Assembly (NCBI GenBank): GCA_965235115.1
Contig: OZ249439.1
Coordinates: forward strand, 18,228,001-18,292,000
Origin: Laetmonice hystrix
Lineage: Eukaryota
Length of the DNA: 64,000 nucleotides
Direction of reading: 5' to 3'
Positions 3,656 to 60,581 of this stretch are shown here, one piece after another (within the stretch, counting starts at the first letter, position 1; the number at the start of each line of letters is the position of its first letter). The translations under genes were made by a program, and so were the position numbers. Under the pieces are notes generated by a model, which was not told where the DNA came from, did not search any database, and was given only the letters and a program-made list of their open reading frames with translations.

Positions 3656-5358
3656 CAGAGTCCATTTTCATGCTACAGAGCACATTTCCAAGGTTGTCAC
3701 TCACTACTCAGCAGCCCCTTTCTTGTGGAAATGCGTACTATTGAATGAGTTTCGATAAAAGCACATGGAGGTATATGATACAATTTCGTGCACGCTTCAC
3801 CCCACCTTTTTGTATAGGTCCAATGCTTTAGGTAGCCACTCACATAAATATCACATAAGGCGTATAATTAACTTTACACAGGTGGCGGTGGGCCTCTCAC
3901 ACCTCTCATTAAAACACCTATCAGCCAGGTGTGCACAAGGGATACCGAGATCACACCTGGTTTGGCAGATGCGTAATCAGCTTTGCTGCAGCCTCACTGA
4001 TGGTTTTTAGGTTCCCCTACCTTCTGACCCACGCTTGAATTCATCTGTCACCTCAATACTGTATAAGAGCTGTAATAATAACCCTGAGGTCGTTAAATCA
4101 TGAGGCACATAGAGCAGACAGCACCAAGCAAACCCAACAAATTTTATGAGCTTCTAATGACTTTTTGAAAACCTCAACTTCAATGGACACAAACAACGTG
4201 AAAATGCTCTTTCTATACAATTTCTTTCACAGTAGCCTTTCCATCCCCTCCCTATACCTAACCTAGAGTGGGAGAGTAAGTTCCTCGGAACCCTTCTACT
4301 TGACCTTAACAGACCTACCTCCATGCACCCCCTCTGTACCCTATATTGTACTCGTGACTGAAAATTCTAAAGGAGTTCGGTTTGACATGCTACACGACAT
4401 AATCCTTTTTTCTCGGTGACGTGCATGCCTGGTGACCATGAGAACCTGACCACTTACGTACAAGCTGTTTCAGCCAAGTGTCTTTGTTCCCCATAACAGG
4501 TGCTCAGTTGACTCGGAGACATCAACTGACAAGGTTAACCTACTTGTTCTAATTTGCACTAGAATTTCCATTGAAACTTCACACCTTCTTCACAGTTTCT
4601 CGTTCACGTTAGAAAGGCCTAAAATTCTTGCTGACACCTTCTTTCAGCAAATCTTGAAAGACATTTGAGAAAACTAGGGGAAAGGTTACCAAGATCAGAG
4701 GTGAAGAGGTTATCAAGAAGGCACTGACATATAATGGCCGGAATTATTAACCTCTTCCATCAACTCCTGTCTGGATTCAGCCTCAGTGAAGGGCCCGGCT
4801 GAAAGCTCTCCAATACGTCATGTGTTACCAGCCCTGCTGAAAGGATGTGGGGCGGGAACCCTTCAGTGAGTCATAGGGTGCTAAAAACGGCTCGCGTATG
4901 TCAACCTGACCACATTAATCAAGTGCTTGAAAAAGGAGATCGGTTCTTTTCACCAACAGTCACCTCAGGGTACTTACCATGCTTTTAAAAAAATACTTTG
5001 ACACATCATGCGGGTCGGGTATCTGTATCAGGGTATCTTGGAATAGGGTATCTGCTGAACTGTGGAATACTTAACATTTAAATCTAATTTCATTCCGTAA
5101 GTAAAACGGGGCTGATTGGAAAAGGAATGGACGTATCATTATCAGGCCTATTATAAAGTGATATCTGACAGTTGTATTAAATGGCGATTGTCACTTTCAT
5201 GAAACCCGACTGAGGCATCTGCAATTACATTTCTATACCCTTAAACTCTTGAGCCTTGGAAATGCAATCTTGCCGCCAGAAAACCACAATAATGAATGAT
5301 TTTTTTATTACTTCCATTTAATCAAGCTTCGCCCCATCGCCGTGGTACTTTCTCACCC

Positions 5359-5902
5359 TAGTTAACGATGCCATCTCGGGGTGGGTTGACTAGTTAACGA
5401 TGCCATCTCGGGGTGGGTTGACTAGTTAACGATGCCATCTCGGGGTGGGTCGACTAGTTAACGATGCCATCTCGGGGTGGGTCGACTAGTTAACGATGCC
5501 ATCTCGGGCTGGGTTGACTAGTTAACGATGCCATCTCGGGCTGGGTTGACTAGTTAACGATGCCATCTCGGGTTGGGTTGACTAGTTAACGATGCCATCT
5601 CGGGGTGGGTCGACTAGTTAACGATGCCACCTCGGGGTGGGTTGACTAGTTAACGATGCCATCTCGGGGTGGGTTGACTAGTTAACGATGCCATCTCGGG
5701 TTGGGTTGACTAGTTAACGATGCCATCTCGGGCTGGGTTGACTAGTTAACGATGCCATCTCGGGGTGGGTTGACTAGTTAACGATGCCATCTCGGGGTGG
5801 GTTGACTAGTTAACGATGCCATCTCGGGGTGGGTTGACTAGTTAACGATGCCATCTCGGGTTGGGTTGACTAGTTAACGATGCCATCTCGGGCTGGGTTG
5901 AC
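5359..5902. repeat. 32-bp minisatellite, 17 copies
   Basis: Unit TAGTTAACGATGCCATCTCGGG(G/C/T)TGGGT(T/C)GAC; 544 bp = 17 x 32. Confidence 0.98.
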
Positions 5903-19062: not shown

Positions 19063-21734
19063 GAACGCCTCCTGCAGCGCTGGTTTATTTTGATTCCTGA
19101 ACTTGGACACTCCTGCACAGGCATTGCTTATATTAACAGAACCTCACTGCTCGAAACACAGGTATTCTGACATACCTCAGTCCTGGATAATTTTATGGAG
19201 TCATAGAACATGATCGATGCCCACACGGCATTTATTTCGGTTTTCTTTCACATAACATTAATACAATTTCACAATATACGTCATTGAGAAAAGTCTCGGC
19301 TCGTATCAAAAAAAGAAAGCCATCATACAAACTAGTCAGACCCCATAGCAAAGCGCCCTTTCAGTTTGTTTGTGCAGTATCTGTATACGTATAAAGGGAA
19401 GCATTGATCCAGGAATACCGTTTTGTGCGCCAACATTCCTACATTGTGGGGACCGACGTTGCCCCTAAATTTAGCATGCCATTCCTGATCACCATGAGAA
19501 CTAGCAGACAATGTCCGGCGGACAATGTGGCGGCGGTGACCCCGTCTTGGCGCCGGGTCAGCCCGACAATGTACCCACATGGGCCCTGTGTATACCTCAC
19601 CTGAGATGGCCACGTGCTAGTCTTCAGGAATGTGTCATTGTACTCCTTACTTACCGACAACAACCAGACTATGTTCACCGTACCCGTTATCATCGGCCCA
19701 TTGGGCACCCAGAGGTATAGTTTTTATGTTGGTGTCAGCTTTAGGCTCATGCCGATGTCATAACCTTGCCAATGGAGGTACGTCATAAAAACACCTGCTA
19801 ACGTTGATATTAACACTTATCAGTCAGGTACACGATACTAATAATATTAATAGAAAGACTGAGAAAAATCAACAAAATCAAAAAAAAGCATATCAGACAC
19901 AACATAATCATTCCGATTTATCCCTCTATGAACGCTAATTCTGAGCAGCAATTTAAATCTTTTATTATTGAAAAATATATAACTTGAAACTCAATATATA
20001 TTTTGTCTTTTCATTCTTACAGCTACCGGTCTCTGTGATTGACTACAAACTACCCAATAATCGATCATTAGCTTAATTACCAGTAGATGTACATGCACTA
20101 CTATAGTCCGTTTACCGACAAGTTTCTCTACCCGGATTCCACCACACCTTTCAATACATTCAGATGCAGGCGGGCCTGATTCAAACCAAATTCCATTAAG
20201 GAACGTTTGGTATATCATACACTAAGCCACATTAAATCGGTTAGGTCCAGTAAACCCGAACAGGCCTTTCCCTTGTACCTGAAATTTAATAGATGCTACT
20301 TTGTGATGAGCTCCCCACCCCACCCCCCAGCCTTCAAGCTCTTCTTTCAGCAATGCCGAGAAAATAGTGGCCAGATTCAACTGTTTGAAACAGGTTCTGT
20401 CGAGCGACAGTCTAACCATCTTTTCACCTGGCTGATCTGGCTTCAATCCCATGATTTACCCCCTACCCCAAATGGCAGTTAAACTGCCTCTCGGTGGCAT
20501 GGAGGGTAAAAGGGGGCAAATAGCCGGGTCCCAGTGCGGGCCAGGTGAGCAGACAGGGTGCACAGCTCGAGGGGTTTTTACCGATCGTCTTTGTCCCGCT
20601 CCTCTGTTGTGGTGAATGTGACAAAATGTGAGTTGGCCGACTCAGCAGGCAGGCTGGCGGGTAGGCTTAGCCTTGTTACCCTACCCCTGCAGTCGTGCGT
20701 ACCCAAGGTACCGGCGGGGATTCCAGCCCACCAGCCACATCAACACCAGCCACAAAGCTTCCACTGACCTTTGACAAGGTGCAGACATAGTCTTGTACTC
20801 CTCACAATGGTCTATCTAGACTCTGTCCAACTGCTCCTACCCTTCCTATAATCTCCTTTCTAACATCCTCTTCCAACTCGGCACCCCCCGAGGAGAACGC
20901 AGAATTACTGGGATGTGTAGAAAAAACGAATGTGTTGGGTATCCAGAGCATCTCAAAGTAAACTATACCTTCCACTCAACGGTTCCGTGTATAAAACCAG
21001 TATAGGGGTCTCTGGGCATACATAAAAATAGACGAAAACACAGAAACACGTACAAACCTTTCAAGATTGGCAGTACATCACTTTAACATTACCGTATTCC
21101 GCTCAACCACGTGAAAAATGTATTAACTTATTGAATATTTAACGATTGTAAATTGAAGATCCATAAGCCTCAGGGCTTCACATCCTTGTTTCACCATCAC
21201 ATGTATTACGATCAACAAAGTCTGTACATCTGTATATCAATATGTTTATGATGGCGGAATAAACTAATAATAATAGTATGGTTTTATGTCCGTTCTACAG
21301 CAGATAATGTCAATAGATCAACCCCCATCTGGTGAAATTCTGAACTCTGAGAACTCACAGCTGCCAGCTACCTGTGCTGGTATCTCGCCACGAGTAAACA
21401 TCCATCGTCCACCGACGTGTTGGAGCATAATAATTTATTATTAACACAGACTAAAAAAAAAACTCGAATCTAAATTATATCCAAACCCATCCAGGTGTTC
21501 AACGGCCTACATGGACCTCTGCCCACATTACTCCTATTAATTTATAAGTATAAAGTTAAGTATAAAGATGCCCAGGTTATTACTCATTGTGAATTATCTA
21601 AAGTCAATCGACTTAATCATATTTTTCTTTGCTTGAACAGTATCACATACCGTACGGAGACCCTATCGATCCACATGGCGACTTCTGGTACCATACCGAG
21701 CCCTTTAGTGGCTCCGTCTAGCAGTAAAGTTCGT

Positions 21735-21785
21735 ACTCACCTGAAAAATACATACAAAGGGAAAGTTAATGCAATTGTTGTTACT
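21735..21785 (-). other. Juxtaposed 3' and 5' splice sites (recursive-splice-site-like)
   Basis: The minus strand reads CATTAAC TTTCCCTTTGTATGTATTTTTCAG|GTGAGT, with the junction between 21741 and 21740. Confidence 0.5.
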
Positions 21786-25628: not shown

Positions 25629-26250
25629 ACCACCATCTGCATACACAGCGGGATGTGAGGAGGAGGAGGTATGAATATGATGACTGTCTGGTCCATGTTA
25701 GATCTACACCCACGCCATGTACCACCATCTGCATACACAGCGGGATGTGAGGAGGAGGAGGAGGAGGAGGAGGAGGAGGAGGAGGAGGAGGAGGAGGAGG
25801 AGGAGGAGGAGGAGGTATGAATATGATGACTGTCTGGTCCATGTTAGATCTACATCCACGCCATGTACCACCATCTGCATACACAGCGGGATGTGAGGAG
25901 GAGGAGGAGGTATGAATATGATGACTGTCTGATCCATGTTAGATCCACACCCACGCCATGTACCACCATCTGCATACACAGCGGGATGTGAGGAGGAGGA
26001 GGAGGAGGTATGAATATGATGACTGTCTGATCCATGTTAGATCCACACCCACGCCATGTACCACCATCTGCATACATAGCGGGATGTGATGATGATGAGG
26101 AGGTATGAATATGATGACTGTCTGGTCCATGTTAGATCTACATCCACGCCATGTACCACCATCTGCATACACAGCGGGATGTGAGGAGGAGGAGGAGGAG
26201 GTATGAATATGATGACTGTCTGATCCATGTTAGATCTACATCCACGCCAT
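25629..26250. repeat. Compound minisatellite: constant 80-bp core plus variable (GAG)n tract, about 6.5 copies
   Basis: Tracts start at 25657, 25749, 25895, 25990, 26088 and 26183, with 4, 22, 5, 6, (GAT)3(GAG)2 and 6 triplets. Confidence 0.97.
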
Positions 26251-28710
26251 CTACAGACACACATCACGTTGGAAAACCACGTTCAGCCAACCTGACCAAA
26301 TCCCGCTCCAAGTATTTTAATGGCTAACTCCATTGCCGAGCCCCAGGCCGAGGGAGAAATGTATTCTCAAAATAGTACATATCATCCCTGATTATATAGT
26401 CATAGTCTGTGGTCACACTGAACCGTACTGCTATAAGGTCGCATATAGAACGTTGGTGTTGACTCCCCGCCATCACAAAGATCGAACCCCCAATAAAATG
26501 CACATTAAAGTGACATTAACTCTTTTTCGTGACTATATATTTGGTTTTGGTACATTCCGAACTGTACAACGACACAGCAATCAAACATAAACTTGCCATC
26601 CCAGCTTGGGATAGCAGCCTATATGGTCGATACCGTCGTCTGGGAGGTGTCAAACGATTGCACGTACCACTGCATTAAACCATAAAATCATGGCTTCAAA
26701 TCGACTTGCCTCGATTGTCAAGGGACCATAGCCGTAAGCCCCTGGTCCTCCCCAGACAATTACCATAGGCTCTACTTCATCTTCCATAACACAGGTCTTA
26801 TACTATAGATGATGTAGAGTTGAACAGCTCCACCGTTTCTGTAACACTTTAATTTATTCAACAACATGACTGCCCACTCCATCTCGGTCCGAACACAGCA
26901 GATCTGATGGATTTTCAGAATTGATTTTTTTACAGATTCAAATGGCATGACCTTATTTTCCACTTTATATAGCTGAATATGAACCTGCCGACGGAATGTG
27001 CCCTATATTAAGTTTAATTGCATCCTCTTTTTATGCCTGAAATAAAATCTTTTCTATGGTATACGTGAACACGGTTAGCAACCCATCCAGGGAAAATAGC
27101 ATTCGTTCTACTTCTTCACAATTACACGGCACAAACATGGGCGCGCGCTGTCTGATTCCTGAGTACGAGGGCTATAAGGTTTCGCACGAGTTCCTAGTGT
27201 TGATCAATATGTTCACGTAAAGTTAGGGGTGGTCCATATCGGGTCACTGCTCACAAACAACACTGAATCACTGACGTGTACAAAGAGAGGACTACACTGT
27301 ATGATCTTACCGTGGTTGAAAGAGACGTAACAATAAATGGGCCTCAACCATACTAGACGACCGGAGTCTTGTGAATGACAGTGAGTATATTACAAGAGCG
27401 TTTCTGTATAAATTTTCCGCTTTTCAAAACGATCCTCGTAACAGATGCATGGGATGACAATAACAGAACACTTACATATGCTTAAATATACGACTGCCAT
27501 TACGAAAAACCGTCACATCTCGAATTTATGGGAGACTAAATATGTGCACTGACGATTTCATGATACGGACTTTCGTAGGCATTTCAATAAATTTGATCTA
27601 AAATTCACTGATTACGAAAAGATGAGGTGGAAGGTAGAAGGGAAGCGGTAGATGTAAAACCATCTGGTAAATTACCTGTGCTTCTTTTAATCGCCCCCAC
27701 ATCCACCGCTGACAAAGGTGACATTTACCATCTTCCAAACTCTTGCACAATGTGTATCTCCTCATGATGAAACCTCAACATGTGCACTTCCCTTTTTTCA
27801 TTTAACAAAATACTTATTAAATGTCTAGTCACATTGTTAACCCACATCATTATTCTAGCCAACTTCCTTTATATGTATGTCAGATTTTGAAACCACTTTC
27901 AAATATACAGCACTGTTGGATTACACTTCTTTCAAGTACAATACTTACATTAAATTTCTGACTAACTTCAAAACTGGTACCTTAGCCTAATATGCCAAAA
28001 TAAATCTACCAACATTTTAATAAAGTATTAGGGATTGGGGGTCAGCGAGTAAGGAAACCATGGACTACTCTCACCTGATGAAGCTGACCCCCACTGACAG
28101 TCTGCCACAGTCGGGATCACATGATCTCGTCATGTTCTACAGCCTAGGAAACCTGTGAATAAGTTCTATGACCTAGTTTAATCGGGTTGATCGATGATTT
28201 GTACATCCATCTACCTGGCATCACCAAGTACATATACCTAACGAACTGATGCCTTCGGGGATTTGGCAGTCACTAGAAGACAACACATATGAAATAGATA
28301 GAGGCCTTCAAAACATTTTGTCCGTAACTGTTCTATTTAACTCCCCCATACTGACTGAGGTTCTGGGGACTATGACTATCGGTTATCTGAAAGTGGTCAC
28401 CTACTTACTGACAGGTCTGAATGATCATTTCTATCTTAAATTTTAAATTAGAAAAACAGAATTTGCTGAATAAGTCAGTGGACTCTAGTTATTTTGGTAG
28501 AAAGTAGCATTCATAGAAGGAGTTACCGGAAAGACTTTTTCCGACGGGGCGTTCTGTCTTCCTGTAGATTTCACAGATAGAACGTGTTTTACATGACTCC
28601 ATTGTGGCCTGCAGGTAATGGGCTGGCCATCAATTACAATAAACTCACAGTAAAACTGCCCCACTGTTCGCAACCGTCCACGTCAAGCACACAGGTTTCA
28701 TTGACTGTGG

Positions 28711-29118
28711 TCAGAGAGAGAGCAATAGGTCAGGGTAATGTTAGTCCTCATGTTATACATAGGTCACCAATATAACGATCACTCAGAACAAAACTCAGAG
28801 AGAGCACTAGGTCAGGGTAATGTTAGTCCTCATGTTATACATAGGTCACCAATATAACGATCACTCAGAACAGAACTCAGAGAGAGCACTAGGTCAGGGT
28901 AATGTTAGTCCTCATGTTATACATAGGTCACCAATATAACGATCACTCAGAACAGAACTCAGAGAGAGCACTGGGTCAGGGTAATGTTAGTCCTCATGCT
29001 ATACATAGGTCACAGATATAACGATCACTCAGAACAGAACTCAGAGAGAGCAAATGGTCAGGGTAATGTTAGTCCTCATGTTATACATAGGTCACCAATA
29101 TAACGATCACTCAGAACA
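28711..29118. repeat. 82-bp minisatellite, 5 copies
   Basis: GGTCAGGGTAATG starts at 28728, 28810, 28892, 28974 and 29056. Confidence 0.97.
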
Positions 29119-38721: not shown

Positions 38722-38938
38722 TCAAAGCAGCTCAATGTCTCCAGGAACGTCGCTCATATGCTATGGTAGTCCATCTCCTGGCATAGGAACCGACTCCCGC
38801 AGCCAACACTGACTCAATTCTTTCAAAAGGGGCCTCACACGGCTTACCAAGTCCGATTTCTGTTTGTGACATGAATCTGAAATTTGTCTGGATGGTAAAA
38901 ACTGATAAAACAATAATCGTCATTCTGCCTTTAACGAC

Positions 38939-39186
38939 CTCCACTGCATGGTACCTGGTCAGACCTCGATCTCCACTGCATGGTGTACCTGGTCAGACCT
39001 CGATCTCCACTGCATGGTGTACCTGGTCAGACCTCGATCTCCACTGCATGGTGTACCTGGTCAGACCTCGATCTATACTGCATGGTGTACCTGGTCAGAC
39101 CTCGATCTCCACTGCATGGTGTACCTGGTCAGACCTCGATCTCCACTGCATGGTGTACCTGGTCAGACCTCGATCTCCACTGCATG
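38939..39186. repeat. 34-bp minisatellite, about 7.3 copies
   Basis: Unit CTCCACTGCATGGTGTACCTGGTCAGACCTCGAT. The first copy is 32 bp. Confidence 0.97.
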
Positions 39187-42100
39187 ATGTAACCACTATT
39201 TGTTACTGTTTGCCCGACTAGTACTAAGTGGTTTTAAACTCGTGTGGGTCCTCCTTTTAATCCGTGGACGATAATGATATTGCTTGATCTACATAAATAC
39301 CAATTATAATTCTAAAGAATTCTAAATTCTGGAATAATGCTACCTTTGTACAGTGTATCAATTCTAGAATCACTCGCAATGCCTCCCAGTTATATTAAAG
39401 ATAAAATTATTAAATTTTACATAATTTTGTTTAAAAGTTTAGCCAGGCAAGGGTGGTAAAGTGTAATGTTTGAATGTGTTTTGTTGCCTGGAGATTATCA
39501 TATTTGTGGTAGTAACCAGGGAAACATGACAGGCCTTTGTGGACATTTAGTTTTTTTACCTTGTAGATAACAACCTAACAGGTAAATTGCTATTCTCCTA
39601 AATGATTTATAAATGTGTCTATAATGGTCTGGCCCGGTTTACTACAGCCAATAACAGAGGTTAACTCAGATGGAAGTAATGGGTGTCACGACGTTAGTGC
39701 AGCAAAAAGTCACTCAGCCGTTAAATTATACCCCCGACTGAGGGTCACATTCTTATTTGAATAAATTAACCGTAAATAAATGAACTACATTCGAATAAAT
39801 ATTGTAATAAAGATACAAAATTGGTATAATGCTTGAAGACAGGTCTGTAGATATATTAGGGTAGAATTCCGGATATTATTTAACATGCGTAGTGCTAATT
39901 AATGGAGTTTCTTTAGACTGGTTATATGCTCAGTCTCGAGTTGGGACTGCTGTCCCTGTGCCTTGCCCAGTGTGCCTGTTTGAGTAGGATGAAGTTGTAA
40001 GCTGTCTGACATACGGCATTCTAACCTCACGTCAACGGTTCATTCAATCGTCACCCACCAGTTTACGGAGGAAACAACATATTGAGCAATGTGGGAATAA
40101 GATCCAGACAGCGGCTCTTGAAAATCTAGTGTTAGGTTCCCCATCGAGCAGACAGGTATGTAAAGCTATTCATACCCCACAACATCGACTGAATGATACA
40201 CAAATCCTACCGAGGTCTTCTGGGTCAAACTACAAAATAAGTCAGAAATCCAACACACTCTCTGTCTTTGTGAGGCTTAACGCCGCCGGAAAACGTTCAC
40301 TGCTTCAATTTCACACATGAAACAGGTCATGAATGGATCGAGTATTTCAAATATTTCTATTTTGAATCATGTTTCAAGTCTTTTGTGTCAGGTCATCCAG
40401 TACATTGCACCTAGAAGGTAACACGGGACTATAGGTTGTAACGTCTGCACGAGATGGCGCCCGTAATCCTGTTAAAGGAACGGAAGTAACCGCTTTCCAT
40501 GAAACCGTCACAAGACGGATGGCTGGTCCGGATTGACCTTTCTATGACCTTCTCAACCTTTAATTCTTCTCATTGAAAGATTAACTTAAAATGATGATCA
40601 TGATAATAGCACATCCTGTGTTGATGTGGCAATTTGCTGTTAGAACAACGTACGCTACTGTACTCTTAGCCAACAAAGCCATGGACTTTTCGGCGTTTGT
40701 CATTGGCCGCTTTAACAAAATACAGTGTCTGTAAAGTTTTTCACACAGATACTGTTAATGGTGTGTTCCGATACACCTCGGAGCTAAACAAGCAGGTTTT
40801 TATCAAGATTATAGAGGATTCACGCTGGTAGAACGTTTGAACTACTGACGGCATCACCTTGGGACCAGGAGGGCGGGACAATTTTCACAGGGTGATATGT
40901 TACAGAAGAAGAAACCGGCACAATGCCTGTAGGTAATCGTGAGAAAACAGACGCTGGAACCTGGGGTAGGTCTCAAAACCATCGTTGTGTATTATGTCTT
41001 CTATATGCAAGATTTCAATTATTGTGTAAAAGTACCCAATTTTATTTAAGTCTAACATTAGTACTAGTCCTTACCTGAATGATAAATCTCTTGTGATACA
41101 AGAAACAGATCATTACCAGGATATTAACGCAAAGCATAATCTTCTAATATAACCATTCAGGAAGAATATTTAATACCGGCACTTGGAAACAGGTACACGA
41201 ACATTATATTCATCCGTCAAATAGGTATTGCCAGACTTTACAAATGAGTCAAATCTGTACTGAATTTCTTGCTTACATCATTTTCTGTAAAAGCATTTCT
41301 ACAAAGCCATGTGGTATGTTGACTACAACCGAGATCAGTGCCTTCTAAAAAGCCCGGGGGGTCACAAGGTACAGAGTAACTGTTAACATCCTTGCTCTAA
41401 AAATCTATGGAGACTTATGAAAACACCTCAGACTGACCTGCGTAAACCCATCTCAGAGAAACCCTTAATGGCTTATCAACACTCTGCGTAGGAGTAACTT
41501 CATTCATGCTCCTTCTTATAATGGTTATGATGGCTGCTTAAAGTAAAAAAAAACATTTAGTGTACACGTATGACCTAATCCAGCCAGGTTTTAAACGACC
41601 ACTGCTTACATAACTTTCTAAGCTTCAGACCTTAAAATCCGTGTTTCTTTTCCTTATTAATGGGGGAACCCCCTGACCGGAACGAGCTCTGAAATCATCA
41701 TTGCACACCATACACGGTATCACATCCCAGCGTACTCTCCCTCGGTTGTAGATTTGTGTGGAGTTACCATGAAGCAGTCGGTTGATACCTGACACAAGTG
41801 AAGGTCTGTGGTACCTGGCCGATGGGATAACACACCTGGACAGGTGGGGACAATGGTTAGGTTAATACGAGGTTGAGAGTACCCCGCGGGTCAGGGAGGG
41901 GTAAGAATGATGGTGAGAGCCTCCTGCTCCACCCGTGATCGGGATCCTCAACATGGCAGTCACCCGAGGGCACATTCCTATGATCTCACCCTAGCCTGGA
42001 TCATTTACCCCAGGGGTAAGTTCCTGTGATCTCCTCTAACCCGGGTCACTGCCCCAGGGTCGAGTCGGACGATTTTACACTCGGACGGATCCCTGAACGA

Positions 42101-45100
42101 AAGTCTCTCAGGTCTAAGGAAACTGAACTTTTACAAGATAACCTCCTGGTACTCCTGGCAATATCATAGGTATGGGATCTATTTCGTTATCTATAGCGTC
42201 TTGGGTTTGCAGGATTCAGTGATTTCTGGTTTGAATTAAAATCAAGTGAACTGTTCAGTGGTATTCAGTAAGAAACAATAAGACTTCAGTTACAAATACT
42301 GCTAAGAGATTGATTTCTTATGAGAAGCGATTTTTTTAAGGAAGTTAATAGGAAAGCTAATCCATGGCATAGGTTTTAGCAGTACATGTCGTAGGGCTTA
42401 CCATACTGAAGGAAATTTTGTTTGTATGTTGAGTTATACTTTAAAACTGACATTTTACCTCAAGCATTACAAAAAAAATTACAAGGAAATTTATGTTTCC
42501 CTTTTTTTGTTTTTCCAACATTTTTCTTACCGCACTAACTTCATAAATACCTATAGAGTCGGGAACAAAAGACATTTGTGAATCTTGGTCCATAAAAGCC
42601 TACGTACCGCACAACGGAATACTTTTCTATACGACTGCTCCTCGACCTGCAGCTATCCTGGGCCTCGCTCTCGTTTGGGAAGCCCAACATAATGACTAAA
42701 AGAAACACCGCTATAACCAAACACTCTGTTGGAATAAAAAGGACTGTAAAATATAGTTTGTACTCTGGTCGTAGGAAATACGTACTGGTTCGGGAGTTAC
42801 ATATCAAAATGATGTTAATGTTTCATTTAAACACCAGGTGGCAGTAAAGTATGACAATAATTTCTGTAACGCTGCAGAAAACACGCCGAACCCCATGCCA
42901 TGGACATATTTCTATCTGTGCTGTTAAACTGGGCTCCACGTATTGAAATTTGAGAGTAACTTACCTGGTATGACAGATACTAACTTCCCCTAACCGATCC
43001 TCAGAATCTAAACTTACTCAATGCGTCAACAGACTCAACCAAGTATTTGTCATGCTATTCAACTGACAGCATAGCCTGCTTTCTGAAGGTCGTCAGAATG
43101 TACATGGCATACATTTAGCTTTCTGAAGTGTATTATCAAAACCAGGTAGAAGCAGTGTTTGTTTATAAACTATCTTCTTGAAACATAAAAGAAGCACAAG
43201 GATGTTGTGTGAAGAAAATATCTCCCGCGGAGGTCCTACTTCACTCCTGTATGATCTTCTGCGCCTAGTTCTCCATTGACATAAAGTGTTTTGAAATGAT
43301 TTATACTGCTGTAAGCGCTTTGATCCCACCAAGGAATGTACTGGCAGCCCATGGTGTGGGGTATCGTAGCTGGCGTCATCAGTAATCGATCCCTGATCCC
43401 ATTCAACACCATTCACTCAGATCTCCAGGTGTACACCGACATTTCTACACCAAATCTTTGTGTCGACCACCTATTAGATAAGAACCCTTTGTGTGCCTAA
43501 CCTGATCCGCGAACCTCAATACATGAGTAAAAGTTAGTTGTAGATTTATAGATCGTCTTTACTATGTTTCACCGACTATCTATGTGATAAAACAATCGGT
43601 AGACTAGTGCGGCAACCTAATGCTTTCCATCCCCGACCTTGGTTCTGTTTGATCTGGTATTCTCGGGTATGACGACGTTTCAGGCATGACCACCCCCCAG
43701 AGAGTGTTACCCAGAGACTAATATCGTACACAGTGCTCTGCCCTGGCTAACTGATAACCTTCTCACTCACAACATGGGCCCGGAAATATCCCAAAGACCT
43801 ACAACTATACCCCTGAACCATCGACCTTCATTGTCCTTTTCTTTCCCATCCCTAACACTTCACCACCAGGGACCTTGCTTTCTCAGCATACGAGACGTTG
43901 TTAAACGCCTCTCTACTATCGGGGCGAAAAGTCTCGACAAGTATAAGTGTGCATTTCATTTGAAGTCACTTTCTCATCACTTAAAGCCTAAGTTAGGTTA
44001 CACTAAAAGGTCAACACTCGGACAATATAAGAATGTCATTATCCACGTTTCTACGTTGATGGTTTATGTATGTATCTTAACCTTGGAACTCTAGGATTTC
44101 GCTGATAAACTTCAAACACCTGAAACAGAATAAAACGACATTATATAATTTTCCAAGAGATTAGAACATACCCGTTATACAACATTTCCGGTGACGTGGT
44201 ATCCATGGAAAATGTGATGAATATGTCGACCAACTGTCAGCAGGCAGCTCCTAATGTTTGTGAAGTCACTGAGGTTTCTCACAGCAGACTGGAGTAGTGA
44301 CCAGTGATTGAAATGTCCTCTACATCAGGTTGTCGTGTCACATAGCATCAGAAGTCTTGATATCAAGAAATGTCGCTTGTAATCAATGTATGAGTTGATT
44401 AATTAGTATTCTCAACGTTCAGTAGAGAAACAACGTCTTGTCGATGGGCGTCGCATAACTTAGATAAAGTGACATTGTGGGAGGTATTCCACTCGAGCAC
44501 CGATATCCTGACACGCGTATCTACGTAAGAAAACCATGCAGTTCATAGCCCTGACGTGTACGACTTGGTCCACTGCGCTGTGTACTATATGAAACGTCTT
44601 GTACCTGACTCCGCACTGTTACCTCACAGACGATTCTGGTAGTATACTTAATGATTCTTTCATTCAGTCTCTGAATCAAAGGACAATCTACATGATGTAA
44701 CGTGTACATAATATATATCCAACGTAACGACCATGGCCAGAGTCAGGTCGAGACAAAGACATCTCAGGTGAACAGGATGTTGTCCCACGATGGTATGTAC
44801 AAAGAACCCCGCCAGGGCCCAGAAGATGGGGTGGGCAGGTACCTAGACGTTTATCTTGATGTACTACCTAAACACCCTCCAGACGGCGTCACCACAAATA
44901 TCTGGCTCCCACATACCTGGCCATCAACAACAATCAGCTACCCCCTCCAACCAACCTCGTCTTTACCTGTGCTAGAATCACAACTTAGGGGCCCGGCTTG
45001 GATCATCAAGGTATGTCAGATCACAGAATCTCTTCCCCGAAATGTTCTCAGACTAACAACAAATAACGGTGTAAAGACTGATAAAAAAATGCAATCCTGT

Positions 45101-54947: not shown

Positions 54948-55144
54948 TCAGAATCCAGCTCTCTCCCAAAGTGTTGGCATCTCCCCACTGACAACGGACG
55001 ACCTTTTCACACCGGGGAGTTTGAAGGGGACTCACACTACTGGATCTCAGAACACCTACTATCTCACTGGAAATTACCGCATGAAGCATATTGATCACCT
55101 GGCAAGATGTGAAGGAGAACTATCCGAGACTATTCATTACTCAC

Positions 55145-55198
55145 CTCAGCTCCCGGCTTAATTACGCTGGTTTTTGTAATGAGGTGGAAAAGGCTTAC
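55145..55198 (-). CDS. 54-nt exon that itself begins with a 5' splice-site motif (RS-exon-like; VSLFHLITKTSVIKPGAE)
   Basis: A long pyrimidine tract CCCCCTCTTTTTATCTTTTCAG is followed by GTAAGC. Downstream donor GAG|GTGAGT. Open in phase 0-0. Confidence 0.5.
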
Positions 55199-57633
55199 CT
55201 GAAAAGATAAAAAGAGGGGGAATGAGTCAACAGGAATAAGGATATGTTACTCAATGGCACGATGCTCAACTTTCGCCTTCAACTGACAACTATCAACTTC
55301 CAGAATGTTGAATTTCTTCTTTTCACGTCCTGTATCCATCTAAAATGTCTCATCCACACACTGATTTATTATTATATATTCATTGCTGCGAATAATACAT
55401 TTCTAAAAATGGCCATGGCCTCACACATTCAGGCCTGCATACCTTTCAAGAGTAAAGATTTTTAAAAAATGAGAGAAAAAAACAAACCCAGCGGCTAAGA
55501 GCCCGTTGTGTTGTTTCCAATTCAGTTTAAATAGCAGACGTCAGTTTTTTCATATCTAAGTGTTAGCCTAGAATAAAGGTAACACATCATATTTATTTAA
55601 TGTACTTGGCAATGAGAACCCAATATTTTCAAACTTTACTATGTCAATAAAAGAAGAAAAATTAACAAAGGAAAACACTCAAGTGGTAATGGGTATTCAA
55701 CTGGCCTAATGGATTTTCTTGGGCCAGATGACGGGAGGGAATTGTGCGGATCTCATAGAGTGTTGACCTGGCGGCCCCAGATTTCGTAAACTAAGAACTG
55801 CCGCTTCCTCCCCAGCTCCTGGTCCCACCATCCCCTCCACCTGGCGGTCATTATCCCGGCCAGATTTCCTATAACCTCGTAATACACTGCTGACAAAGCA
55901 TGGGAGAATGTACACAGATACAAATCTACACCGGCCGCTTCAGGCATTAAGGCACTCACAAAAATTTATACTAGGCACACACAAAAACATCTAAGGTTGT
56001 GTAGAAACAGACAGGCCTTCACAAAGGAAGCGATTGTCTCCGTGCCACAGCATGACACAGGAAGTGTCCTCTGATGTCACATGACGCTCCGGGTCCATAA
56101 AAAACCGGGTGGAAAGTCTTGTTAGAAACAGTTAACTCCCCTATGTGGTGTCGGGAAGGGAAGAGTCAGGTGTGTGGAGGTAATCTGATAACTACTGACT
56201 GATTGCTACCATACTGGCGGCCCCAAGTTCCGTTCAAGCCCTCACATTCACACAAAGCTTCCGAATACCGTCCAATCAGGACAAGAAATCCATACATCGT
56301 CTCAAGCCTGGGGATACGTTTAAGAGATGAAAGCGTGTTGAACATCACTGCTCCTTAAATCACCGACGATAAGTTCTCAATTATAATCAGAGTAGATGGA
56401 GGTGCCAAATACCACACACCAGTGAATATAATTACCCATTAGGTTTACTTAAAGAGGCAGAACGGTGAATGTCAGCCAGGTATGGTGGACTAGGATTTCA
56501 TTCCATATATTATAGATCTAGTTTCCCTTTTTCTTTATTGCAATCTGAATGTATGAGCCTTTTGAGGGCGTTTCCACAGATATTCTACATTTTAACTATC
56601 ATTTTGGTATCGCTCAGTCTTAGTTTAAATCTGCCCTTCCTCCGAGCTGAGCTTGCCATCCTGGGGATGAGAAACATTTTTTTACTGAGTAGTGGATTAC
56701 CCCCCCCCCCCCTCCCAATCAGATAGGGCCCTCCAAACAATCATATATTTTCAACTCAGTCAATACCAGCAACAGTCAGTCTTGGGGTGTCTCCAAAGAG
56801 GCCTTCACCCAACCTGACTCCTGTTGTGGGAATAAAAACATCAATCAAATAGTAATCAAGGTACACTCAGGTAGGTTTGTACCCCTGTAAATACTGATAT
56901 AATTAAAATATAATTGGATCGTCACAATATTCGCGATTAGCGGTACGTGAAGTACTCTGCCCCCCCAAGTCGGCCTTCAATTATTCCATTACGACCACAA
57001 TTAATGACGTTTTTTAAGAGTTAATATGTATCATTTTCAGCATGTGTTTCCTTCTTTTTAGTTGAGTATTTAATGATGACGGAAGAATCCAGCTGTCACC
57101 AAGCATGATCTAATAGTATAATTAAGCCACCCAATAATGTCCTCCATCACATGATTCTTACTGTACAAAAAACCAGACACGCAGACATTTCTTTGGGACC
57201 AAAACGTCCCCAAAATCTCGTCCACACATAAACATATACATAAAGAAAATGGTTGTTACGTTCGAGCATGGAAATGAGAGTTTCTTTGGTAATTAGCTTA
57301 ATTTACGATCTATAATCTATAATTAGTGCCATTTGTGTAACAGCAGATATATTTTATACACGGTGATCTATTCACCTTAACTTCTTCCATACGAAATGGT
57401 AACTGACGGGAGACAGAAAGAGCAGAGAGGGATCTCCAACTCCCTCTGTCCCATATAAACTCATGGGAAGCTGAACAACTTCCTCCTCATACTAAAAACA
57501 TACAACTGGACGATTCGTGATCAAACATGATAACGGAAACATGGTTTCCTTCTGCATGGAATTTTCTGTGTAGGCCTACGTGACATTTTTACTGCCCCAC
57601 TCCGGCAATAGAACAATCCATGCCGACCAACTC

Positions 57634-57889: not shown

Positions 57890-59746
57890 GGCTTGTGGAA
57901 TATCTAACTATCTGGGCAGGGGCTTCCATGGTTACCATTGAGTTCAAGGCTTGTGGAATATCTAACTATCTGGGCAGGGGCTTCCATGGTTACCATCAAG
58001 TTCAAGGCTTGTGGAATATCTAACTATTTGGGGAGGGGCTTCCATGGTTACCATCGAGTTCAAGGCTTGTGGAATATCTAACTATCTGGAGAGGGGCTTC
58101 CATGGTTACCATCGAGTTCAAGGCTTGTGGAATGTCTAAGTATCTGGGGAGGGACTTCCATGGTTACCATCGAGTTCAAGGCTTGTGGAATATCTAACTA
58201 TCTGGGGAGGGGCTTCCATGGTTACCATCGAGTTCAAGGCTTGTGGAATATCTAACTATCTGGGGAGGGGCTTCCATGGTTACCATCGAGTTCAAGGCTT
58301 GTGGAATATCTAACTATCTGGGGAGGGCTTCCATGGTTACCATCGAGTTCAAGGCTTGTGGAATATCTAACTATCTGGGGAGGGGCTTCCATGGTTACCA
58401 TCGAGTTCAAGGCTTGTGGAATGTCTAACTATCTGGGGAGGGGCTTCCATGGTTACCATCGAGTTCAAGGCTTGTGGAATATCTAACTATCTGGGGAGGG
58501 GCTTCCATGGTTACCATCGAGTTCAAGGCTTGTGGAATATCTAACTATCTGGGGAGGGGCTTCCATGGTTACCATCGAGTTCAAGGCTTGTGGAATATCT
58601 AACTATCTGGGGAGGGGCTTCCATGGTTACCATCGAGTTCAAGGCTTGTGGAATATCTAAGTATCTGGCGAGGGGCTTCCATGGTTACCATCGAGGTTAA
58701 GGCTTGTGGAATGTCTAAGTATCTGGGGAGGGGCTTCCATGGTTACCATCGAGTTCAAGGCTTGTGGAATATCTAAGTATCTGGGGAGGGACTTCCATGG
58801 TTACCATCGAGTTCAAGGCTTGTGGAATGTCTAACTATCTGGGGAGGGGCTTCCATGGTTACCATCGAGTTCAAGGCTTGTGGAATATCTAAGTATCTGG
58901 GGAGGGGCTTCCATGGTTACCATCGAGTTCAAGGCTTGTGGAATGTCTAACTATCTGGGGAGGGCTTCCATGGTTACCATCGAGTTCAAGGCTTGTGGAA
59001 TATCTAACTATCTGGGGAGGGGCTTCCATGGTTACCATCGAGTTCAAGGCTTGTGGAATATCTAACTATCTGGGGAGGGACTTCCATGGTTACCATCGAG
59101 TTCAAGGCTTGTGGAATATCTAACTATCTGGGGAGGGGCTTCCATGGTTACCATCGAGTTCAAGGCTTGTGGAATATCTAACTACATGTATCTGGGGAGG
59201 GCCTTCCATGGTTACCATCGAGTTCAAGGCTTGTGGAATATCTAACTATCTGGGGAGGGGCTTCCATGGTTACCATCGAGTTCAAGGCTTGTGGAATGTC
59301 TAAGTATCTGGGGAGGGGCTTCCATGGTTACCATCGAGTTCAAGGCTTGTGGAATATCTAACTATCTGGGGAGGGACTTCCATGGTTACCATCGAGTTCA
59401 AGGCTTGTGGAATATCTAAGTATCTGGGCAGGGGCTTCCGTGGTTACCATCGAGTTCAAGGCTTGTGGAATATCTAACTATCTGGGCAGGGGCTTCCATG
59501 GTTACCATCGAGTTCAAGGCTTGTGGAATGTCTAAGTGTCTGGGGAGGGGCTTCCGTGGTTACCATCGAGTTCAAGGCTTGTGGAATATCTAACTATCTG
59601 GGCAGGGGCTTCCATGGTTACCATCGAGTTCAAGGCTTGTGGAATGTCTAAGTGTCTGGGGAGGGGCTTCCGTGGTTACCATCGAGTTCAAGGCTTGTGG
59701 AATATCTAACTATCTGGGCAGGGGCTTCCATGGTTACCATCGAGTT
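57890..59746. repeat. 58-bp minisatellite, about 32 copies
   Basis: Unit GGCTTGTGGAATATCTAACTATCTGGGGAGGGGCTTCCATGGTTACCATCGAGTTCAA. The ORFs here are repeat artefacts. Confidence 0.98.
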
Positions 59747-60485
59747 TAAGTAAGAACCAGACTTTATGATTCCGATTCTCAGAGAAATGAACGCCCGGTG
59801 ACTTGACCTTGCCGTCACGTTAGTTCACCTCTTTGCCACAAGATGTCAGACCAGTCGAGTTACGCCAAAACATGTTATTTATGGGCACTCTCCTTCTGAA
59901 GGCTTGCCGGATCTTTTATCTCTCTATAATAAATGAGAAATCCATCTCCGTTGGACCTCACTCTAGGAACTGTACAGATACTGGTCATCGTTTACAGTTG
60001 TCAGTTTACAGATGTTTGTTTTCTCCAACCTGGGAGTAGGACTGACGGTGAACAATGTTGTCACCCGTGTTAGTGTCTCATGAATCATCGAGGAATCTGC
60101 TGGTCACATTGAAAGCTTTTCATGCCAGATTTACACGATCATTAAGTGACAATAACAATATCACAAAATAAGGTCATTAGTAGGATAAACATCTTTCATA
60201 AAACAAGCTCTCTCGGATAAACTTAACATACAACTATAGCTTCAGGAAACAGGAAAAAAAACGGGGTTGTATATGTTAATGTCTCATCGTCATGCGAATG
60301 TCATAATAAACAGTCATATCAGCTCCTTCATCTCATTAGGTCTCAATTCGTAGCCTGAGAATAAAACCACATGTCCCCGGTAATAAGGAATACGTACATT
60401 TTTACTGAGATTTATCACGATCTCTGCAATCCTTACAATGGGCAGGTGTGCAGCCAGTTTTTGTTTCTTGTTAAAAAAAACTCAC

Positions 60486-60581
60486 CTGGAGCGTGGAGAA
60501 GACAAACAGTATGGTATTGGTCGTGGGAGGATTGTGACGCATCAACATAAACACATTCCAGTTTGACAAGACTTAATTTGA
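60486..60581 (-). CDS. Candidate 96-nt phase 1-1 exon (KLSLVKLECVYVDASQSSHDQYHTVCLLHAP), or a recursive site at its 3' end
   Basis: Donor CAG|GTGAGT, upstream TTACTCAG acceptor, open frame. The last 23 nt also form a good pyrimidine tract. Confidence 0.3.

What the first reader, a model, noticed from the sequence alone, without database searches (positions are those of the whole stretch)
55139..55245. Textbook recursive-splicing exon architecture on the minus strand
Seen: a branch-like CTCAT and a long pyrimidine tract ending TTTTCAG are followed immediately by a consensus donor GTAAGC. A second consensus donor (GAG|GTGAGT) lies 54 nt later, and the 54 nt are open in phase 0. Established: recursive splice sites in Drosophila and vertebrate long introns are AG|GT juxtapositions defined by a short downstream RS-exon whose two donors compete. 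Inference: this is a ratchet point or switchable 18-aa cassette in an invertebrate long intron.
Basis: partly seen in the sequence, partly recalled or inferred. Interest (0 to 1): 0.72.

Follow-up and report, generated by a model that had tools for sequence, protein, structure and literature searches.

The report
Conserved recursive splice site, Shroom intron
Deep inside a 138-kb intron of this marine worm's only Shroom gene lies an "intron end fused to intron start" signal followed by a short decoy exon; a related worm keeps it almost letter for letter, so the intron is probably removed in steps as in flies, though no RNA data exist to prove it.

Summary
It has a conserved branch-like box, a 20-nt pyrimidine tract and TTTTCAG|GTAAGC. 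A 54-nt stretch follows, ending in GAG|GTGAGTAAT.

- **Location.** I could place it in a gene. It lies 30.9 kb into a 137.6-kb phase-2 intron of the genome's only Shroom gene. That intron runs from the PDZ exon to a giant 1,300-codon exon. Two conserved alternative first exons also lie upstream of the site.
- **Chance.** Composite sites of this kind number 5 on the sense strand of the intron and 0 on the antisense strand, against about 0.8 expected.
- **Conservation (the decisive result).** I walked about 75 kb along a related worm's contig, where only about 3% of this intron aligns. The colinear position there carries the same box, a pyrimidine tract, CAG|GTAAGC and AAG|GTGAGTAAT.
- **Not a coding cassette.** The decoy exon is 53 nt in the relative, not 54. 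In the frame set by the flanking exons it reads TAA at once, so the 18-aa cassette reading fails.
- **Verdict.** A fly-type ratchet point with a cryptic RS-exon is the best reading (about 0.6). A plain poison exon is the main rival.
- **Limits.** No RNA runs exist for this animal. The scan has already predicted similar sites in other long introns of this genome; what this report adds is cross-species conservation.

The parts
55221..55230 (-). Branch-point-like box TTGACTCATT. It contains TTGAC and CTCAT, with candidate branch adenosines 24 and 28 nt upstream of the acceptor.
   Evidence: Read. Identical 10/10 in the relative at the colinear place.
55201..55220 (-). Polypyrimidine tract ccccctctttttatcttttc; 17 of the 18 scored positions are pyrimidines.
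   Evidence: In the relative the tract is 5 nt longer and differs in sequence but is still pyrimidine (17/18). Composition is kept, not letters.
55199..55200 (-). Acceptor AG of the ratchet point (cAG|). The first-step junction would join the upstream exon to 55198.
   Evidence: CAG|GTAAGC is identical 9/9 in the relative.
55193..55198 (-). Ratchet-point donor GTAAGC. It directly abuts the acceptor and would be rebuilt as CAG|, AAG| or ACG|GTAAGC after ligation to the PDZ exon or to alternative exons A or B.
   Evidence: Conserved 6/6, while only 23 of the next 39 exon positions agree.
55145..55198 (-). Cryptic RS-exon, 54 nt. In the frame set by the phase-2 flanking exons it reads G TAA, an immediate stop.
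   Evidence: It is 53 nt in the relative, with stops in the same frame.
55154..55165 (-). Conserved 12-mer GTAATTAAGCCG inside the RS-exon, of unknown role. It may be an exon-definition element.
   Evidence: Identical 12/12 in the relative. The role is inference only.
55136..55144 (-). RS-exon donor GTGAGTAAT, preceded by GAG. This is the competing downstream 5' splice site that would define the exon.
   Evidence: G|GTGAGTAAT is identical 10/10 in the relative, where it is preceded by AAG.

Best explanation
This is a recursive splice site (ratchet point) with a cryptic 54-nt RS-exon. It lies in the 137.6-kb phase-2 intron of the worm's single Shroom gene.

**Proposed course** (all steps are inferred except the sequence features):
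1. Transcription starts at one of three upstream exons. These are the PDZ exon at window-relative 86218-86070, alternative first exon A at 79905-79832, and alternative first exon B at 70204-70137.
2. The polymerase passes 55.2k after about 31, 25 or 15 kb. The short exon is then defined by its acceptor (TTGACTCATT box, pyrimidine tract, CAG) and by the consensus donor GTGAGTAAT 54 nt downstream.
3. The upstream exon is ligated to position 55198, which removes the first intron segment. This rebuilds a donor, (C/A)(A/C)G|GTAAGC, at the new junction.
4. That donor is then paired with the acceptor of the giant exon 106.8 kb further on, or with further ratchet points. The decoy exon is discarded with the rest of the intron, so nothing of it appears in mRNA.
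5. If the downstream donor wins instead, the exon stays in. A TAA stop then follows one codon after the junction, which gives a truncated message likely to be degraded.
For: **Anatomy.** One search shows all the signals.

**Host gene and intron.**
- ASD2 exons on the minus strand are the only ASD2 locus in the genome.
- A giant exon is 70% identical to protein P0001 from a related worm.
- The PDZ half-domain exon at 86218-86070 scores 24.4 bits against PF00595, above that family's cut-off.
- The donor TTCAG|GT and the acceptor ttgcag|T are both phase 2 in both species, and joining them keeps the frame open.
- The neighbouring HERC2 gene ends at about 111.5k.
- Two further first exons show synonymous-type substitutions and have phase-2 donors.

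**Enrichment and strand bias.** Composite sites number 5 on the sense strand against 0 on the antisense strand, with about 0.8 expected.

**Conservation.**
- Colinear anchors lead to record position 668070 of the relative's contig.
- That position carries the box (10/10), a pyrimidine tract, CAG|GTAAGC (9/9) and G|GTGAGTAAT (10/10).
- Only about 3% of this 41-kb part of the intron aligns at E<=1e-3.
- The exon interior is poorly kept (23/39) and its length shifts from 54 to 53 nt.
- Ultraconserved acceptor|donor motifs, a roughly 50-nt poorly conserved out-of-frame exon and a location in long introns are exactly what is described for fly ratchet points (PMC8605326).
Against: - No RNA evidence of any kind exists. 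The only public runs holding the stretch behave as genomic DNA of one sample.
- The ratchet-point donor (GTAAGC, mismatch at +6) is not clearly stronger than the RS-exon donor (GTGAGT, full consensus). In flies the ratchet-point donor usually dominates, so inclusion could be frequent here.
- The intron also holds ordinary conserved non-coding elements, so conservation alone does not prove a splicing role.
- The nearby strong site at 60487 has no counterpart in the relative, so not every such motif here is constrained.
- The single-intron model rests on phase compatibility and homology, not on transcripts. Undetected small exons between 55k and -51k are possible.
Confidence: 0.6

Rival explanations
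1. It is an ordinary alternative 'poison' cassette exon. The 53/54-nt exon is sometimes included through its own acceptor and the GTGAGTAAT donor. That places a stop right after the PDZ or alternative N-terminus and lowers Shroom output through mRNA decay. The GTAAGC at its start is never used as a donor.
For: - The acceptor and downstream donor are both conserved.
- Inclusion gives an immediate TAA in both species.
- The downstream donor is at least as good a consensus match as GTAAGC.
- Poison exons are a known class.
Against: A plain cassette has no need for a donor consensus at its first six bases. Yet GTAAGC is kept 6/6 while the next 39 positions agree at only 23. Acceptor|donor juxtapositions are enriched on the sense strand of this intron. 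The two readings overlap, because RS-exons can also be included.
Confidence: 0.22
2. It is a conserved non-coding element, such as an enhancer or other DNA- or RNA-level element, that merely contains splice-like words and is not spliced.
For: The same intron holds several conserved non-coding islands with stops in all frames. These are at 80.9-80.3k and at 56.1-55.9k, the latter only 0.7 kb upstream of the site.
Against: Conservation follows splicing logic. The three splice words are kept exactly. The pyrimidine tract is kept in composition but not in sequence or length. The spacer is free to vary. A chance match of both a 9-mer and a 10-mer splice consensus inside a 67%-identical block is improbable, roughly 0.67^19 by my own arithmetic.
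Confidence: 0.08
3. It is an in-frame 18-amino-acid coding cassette.
For: The 54 nt are open in frame 0. The relative's copy is also open in that frame.
Against: The flanking exons are phase 2, so the frame actually used reads TAA at once. The length is 53 nt in the relative.
Confidence: 0.02

Closest known systems
Drosophila intronic ratchet points with cryptic RS-exons (Ubx, kuz, Bx; Hatton 1998, Burnette 2005, Duff 2015, Joseph 2018; summarised in PMC8605326)
   Same: - Pyrimidine tract plus CAG directly abutting GTAAG.
- A cryptic exon of about 50 nt closed by a second donor.
- Position deep in a very long intron of a developmental gene.
- The acceptor|donor motif is conserved while the exon content drifts and is out of frame.
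- Several such sites lie on the sense strand of the same intron.
   Different: - The host is an annelid, not an insect.
- No RNA intermediates have been seen.
- The ratchet-point donor is not clearly stronger than the RS-exon donor.
- Only one of the sites testable here is conserved in the relative.
- The segment left after the site is still 107 kb.
Vertebrate RS-exons in long neuronal genes (CADM1, ROBO2, ANK3 etc.; Sibley 2015; Blazquez 2018, PMC6224609)
   Same: An RS-exon is defined first. A rebuilt donor then competes with the exon's own donor, and inclusion brings a premature stop. The site lies downstream of several alternative first exons, which is the setting in which vertebrate RS-exons were proposed to act as a checkpoint. 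That last point is from my own recollection of Sibley 2015, which I did not re-read here.
   Different: The host gene and phylum differ. There is no evidence here for promoter-dependent inclusion or for control by the exon junction complex.
Poison cassette exons (alternative splicing coupled to mRNA decay)
   Same: A short, conserved, stop-bearing exon inside a coding gene.
   Different: Poison exons do not need, and are not known to keep, a consensus donor at their very first bases.

Membership tests
Recursive splice site / ratchet point with RS-exon | Acceptor (pyrimidine tract + YAG) directly abutting a donor (GTRAGT) | tested here: met
   ttttcag|GTAAGC with 17/18 pyrimidines.
Recursive splice site / ratchet point with RS-exon | Lies on the sense strand inside a long intron | tested here: met
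   It lies 30.9 kb into a 137,625-nt phase-2 intron between the PDZ exon and the giant exon of a minus-strand Shroom gene. The gene model comes from homology, Pfam hits and phase compatibility in two species, not from transcripts.
Recursive splice site / ratchet point with RS-exon | Short cryptic exon (about 50 nt) closed by a second donor | tested here: met
   54 nt, then GAG|GTGAGTAAT. The relative has 53 nt, then AAG|GTGAGTAAT.
Recursive splice site / ratchet point with RS-exon | Acceptor|donor motif conserved across species while the exon content is poorly conserved and out of frame | tested here: met
   CAG|GTAAGC 9/9, branch box 10/10, second donor 10/10, exon interior 23/39, and a length change of 1 nt, in one related species. 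Only about 3% of the surrounding intron aligns.
Recursive splice site / ratchet point with RS-exon | Ratchet-point donor stronger than the RS-exon donor | tested here: inconclusive
   By consensus match, the rebuilt CAG|GTAAGC has 8 contiguous U1-type matches with a mismatch at +6. GAG|GTGAGT matches -2 to +6. The two are comparable. No calibrated splice-site score was available.
Recursive splice site / ratchet point with RS-exon | RNA evidence: junctions into the site without the exon in mRNA, saw-tooth intron coverage, lariats | not testable with these tools
   No RNA run holds or accompanies the stretch. The three runs laid are DNA-like contigs of one sample.
In-frame coding cassette exon | Length a multiple of 3, kept across species, and open in the frame set by the flanking exons | tested here: not met
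   54 nt against 53 nt. The phase-2 context gives TAA at the first full codon in both species.
Shroom family (host gene) | C-terminal ASD2 domain with an N-terminal PDZ domain | tested here: met
   ASD2 positions 4-289 are spread over four minus-strand exons, the best scoring 97.7 bits, and this is the only such locus in the genome. The PDZ half-domain exon scores 24.4 bits, above the cut-off. ASD1 was not tested.

The most novel reading that the evidence does not exclude
Fly-type recursive splicing operates in annelids and is kept by selection between genera. That would make ratchet points with cryptic RS-exons an ancestral bilaterian way of handling 100-kb introns, rather than an insect and vertebrate speciality. 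Here one conserved ratchet point serves three alternative Shroom promoters. It may act as a common checkpoint that either resets the donor or kills the message with an immediate stop.
Probability: 0.5. Interest if true: 0.6.

Novelty: new member of a known kind. Interest (0 to 1): 0.5.

Why it matters
Recursive splicing has been shown experimentally in Drosophila and in vertebrates. My full-text searches found no paper linking it to annelids or other lophotrochozoans.

A ratchet point kept between two worm genera, in an intron that has otherwise diverged beyond alignment, is comparative evidence that the mechanism is used and selected in a third major animal branch.

It also gives a concrete site that can be tested by PCR in a well-known morphogenesis gene (Shroom). 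That gene has three alternative 5' exons that would all feed the same site.

For annotation, it warns that including this 54-nt exon in gene models would wrongly truncate Shroom.

Tried and rejected
- **RNA evidence.** Laying them showed genomic contigs with about 1% variants around the site and none listed between 55064 and 56292. That table is incomplete, so this is weak support at most.
- **Known RNA families.** Rfam gave no hit in the window.
- **PDZ search.** A genome-wide PDZ search missed the Shroom PDZ exon, because the half-domain falls below its listing. The exon was found only through the relative.
- **Long open frames.** None in the window looked coding.
- **Site at 60487.** The relative has no composite site in the colinear interval.
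- **Site at 41837.** It has the weak donor GTGTGT. The relative's sequence obtained ends at record 648134, probably before its colinear place, so it is untested.
- **Sites at 21742 and -6919.** They could not be reached, because the contig look-ups ran short. One next hop needed a GTG-start product of 87 residues that I did not want to type in.
- **A third, more distant species (P0002).** It could not be walked to for the same reason.
- **Islands as hidden coding exons.** The conserved islands at 80.9-80.3k and 56.1-55.9k have stops in all frames and indels that are not multiples of 3, so I rejected this.
- **Strand composition.** GC skew is negative over the whole 264 kb, consistent with minus-strand transcription. 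I did not calibrate it on plus-strand genes, so I do not rely on it.

Full report
**Observation.** On the minus strand the window reads ttgactcatt-ccccctctttttatcttttc-ag|GTAAGC...(54 nt)...GAG|GTGAGTAAT. The acceptor AG is at 55200-55199, the abutting donor at 55198-55193 and the second donor GT at 55144-55143. The 54 nt are open only in frame 0. The 1-kb surroundings occur once in the 627-Mb assembly, and no Rfam family matches the window.

**Where it lies.** The window is contig 4, 18,228,001-18,292,000. I fetched 100 kb on each side. In what follows, coordinates above 64,000 or below 1 are window-relative positions in those flanks.

- *Upstream, on the minus strand.* HERC2 exons lie here: RCC1, MIB_HERC2 and HECT. 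The last coding exon of HERC2 ends at about 111,500.
- *Downstream, on the minus strand.* A 1,317-codon open exon starts at -51,556. A 437-codon exon and four exons that together cover the ASD2 domain follow it. The best ASD2 exon scores 97.7 bits, and this is the only ASD2 locus in the genome. This is therefore the animal's single Shroom gene.

A protein search with the giant exon found its counterpart at 70% identity on a 1.0-Mb contig of a related worm (ENA ERZ26168297, contig_365). HERC2's last exon lies on the same contig.

**Walking the relative's contig.** I walked from HERC2 towards Shroom.
- The walk first turned up a called open frame with a PDZ hit.
- Its counterpart here is an exon at 86,218-86,070. 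It scores 24.4 bits against PF00595, above that family's cut-off.
- That exon ends TTCAG|GTACAG, which is phase 2. The giant exon begins ttgcag|T ATT CGA, also phase 2. The same holds in the relative.
- Joining the two keeps the frame open. The simplest model is therefore one 137,625-nt intron, from 86,069 to -51,555.

Two further islands inside it are real alternative first coding exons:
- Exon A, at 79,905-79,832, encodes MPVDEKSEMSEPGFVARMRDSWSK.
- Exon B, at 70,204-70,137, encodes MFAFVSRQLNKRRSKRKSKKDK.

Between the two species their differences are almost all synonymous. Both end in phase 2 at a good donor. All three 5' exons lie upstream of the site, at 30.9, 24.6 and 14.9 kb.

**Chance.** I counted composite sites in the intron, defined as at least 14/18 pyrimidines, YAG|GT and at least 3/4 of RAGT.
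- The sense strand has five: 60487, 55200, 41837 (weak donor), 21742 and -6919. The antisense strand has none.
- Markov simulations of order 1, 3 and 5 expect 0.4-1.0, and none of 150 runs reached five.
- An empirical null multiplies the 87 real acceptor-like sites by the real frequency of a donor-like hexamer after AG. It expects 0.79.
- A site as strong as 55200 is expected 0.03 times per intron.
- I chose the thresholds, so the figures are indicative.

**Conservation.** Exons of the two species are 80-89% identical in DNA, but their introns are almost unalignable. Only about 3% of the 41-kb stretch compared here aligns at E<=1e-3. Colinear anchors at 80.7k, 79.9k, 76.6k, 72.3k, 70.2k, 61.1k, 56.0k and 55.7k lead to an island aligning 55,230-55,100 with record 668,105-667,975. 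At that place the relative reads:

ttgactcatt-tcctctctctctctctttcatttc-cag|GTAAGC...(53 nt)...AAG|GTGAGTAAT.

- The branch-like box is identical (10/10).
- CAG|GTAAGC is identical (9/9).
- G|GTGAGTAAT is identical (10/10).
- The pyrimidine tract keeps its composition but not its sequence or length.
- Inside the exon only 23 of 39 further positions agree, and the length differs by one base.

This pattern follows splicing signals, not a protein or a fixed DNA word. It matches what is described for fly ratchet points: an ultraconserved acceptor|donor, a cryptic exon of about 50 nt that is poorly conserved and out of frame, and a location in long introns (PMC8605326).

By contrast, the strong-looking site at 60487 has no counterpart in the relative. 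Other conserved islands in the intron are ordinary non-coding elements with stops in all frames.

**Frame.** Every upstream exon ends two bases into a codon. An included exon would therefore read xxG TAA, a stop at the first full codon, in both species. With the 53/54-nt length difference, this rules out the 18-amino-acid cassette.

**Mechanism (inferred).**
1. The short exon is recognised through its acceptor and the downstream consensus donor.
2. The upstream exon is ligated at 55198.
3. The rebuilt (C/A)(A/C)G|GTAAGC donor then pairs with the giant exon's acceptor 106.8 kb on, or with further ratchet points. The decoy exon is removed in that step.
4. If the downstream donor is used instead, the message carries an immediate stop.

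The two donors look about equally good by consensus, so the balance between skipping and inclusion cannot be predicted. In this respect the site differs from the usual fly pattern.

**What is missing.** There is no RNA evidence. The only run search returned three DNA-like runs of one sample. Laying them shows genomic contigs with roughly 1% variant sites nearby and none listed between 55064 and 56292. That table is truncated, so this is weak.

**Literature.** Full-text searches found nothing linking recursive splicing to annelids, other lophotrochozoans or Shroom.

**Earlier scan notes.** Earlier notes report the same kind of predicted site in the ephrin, RBMS/shep, dachsous and PLC-beta introns of this genome, all without RNA data. 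The kind was therefore already found by this scan on other DNA. What this report adds is the host-gene model and conservation in a second species.

**Verdict.** I rate the ratchet-point reading at about 0.6, a plain poison exon at about 0.2, and the coding-cassette reading as rejected. This is a new member of a known kind, of moderate interest.

Noticed in passing
L015:1434-3070 and L014:2217-2497 (window-relative 95,434-97,070 and 86,217-86,497, minus strand): There are about 22 tandem 91-nt copies of the acceptor plus the first ~85 nt of the Shroom PDZ exon (LQIDAGGKAGGCDRIRVGDQVLRVNDVSV...). They sit in the intron just upstream of the real exon, which gives a row of decoy 3' splice sites. 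The relative has no such array, and its corresponding intron is about 1 kb against about 12 kb here.
   Followed up: partly
L013:5832-5905 and L012:6137-6204 (window-relative 79,905-79,832 and 70,204-70,137, minus strand): Two conserved alternative first coding exons of Shroom, of 24 and 22 codons. Each has its own ATG and a phase-2 donor, and would give isoforms without the PDZ domain. Differences from the relative are almost all synonymous.
   Followed up: partly
window 60464-60487, 21719-21742 and 41814-41837 (minus strand); also window-relative -6919: Four other acceptor|donor juxtapositions lie on the sense strand of the same intron. They read ctccag|GTGAGT, ttttcag|GTGAGT, gtccag|GTGTGT and tttgcag|GTGAGT. 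The one at 60487 has no counterpart in the relative. The others could not be tested.
   Followed up: partly
window 44100-44130 (minus strand); relative L032, record 649213: The relative has a second strong ratchet-like site (tctcctttgtttcag|GTGAGT). At the colinear place this genome keeps TGTTTCAG|GTG but with a poor donor (GTGTTT). This may be a site decaying in one lineage, but the alignment is not significant on its own.
   Followed up: partly
L013:6320-6900 (window-relative 80,900-80,320) and window 55880-56150: These are conserved non-coding islands inside the intron. They contain blocks of 20-40 identical bases (for example GTTGGCACGCTTTGGCACACACGCCTC), have stops in all frames, and look enhancer-like.
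   Followed up: partly
window 57890-59750, 192-1326, 5358-5902, 25797-26254, 28715-29118, 38935-39191: There are many young tandem arrays inside the intron, with periods of 58, 108, 32, 95, 82 and 34 nt at 92-97% identity.
   Followed up: no
window-relative 112,000-148,000 versus -100,000 to 84,000: The CpG observed/expected ratio is 0.36-0.50 across the HERC2 gene body but 0.5-0.75 across the Shroom intron. That fits heavy gene-body methylation of the housekeeping gene only.
   Followed up: no
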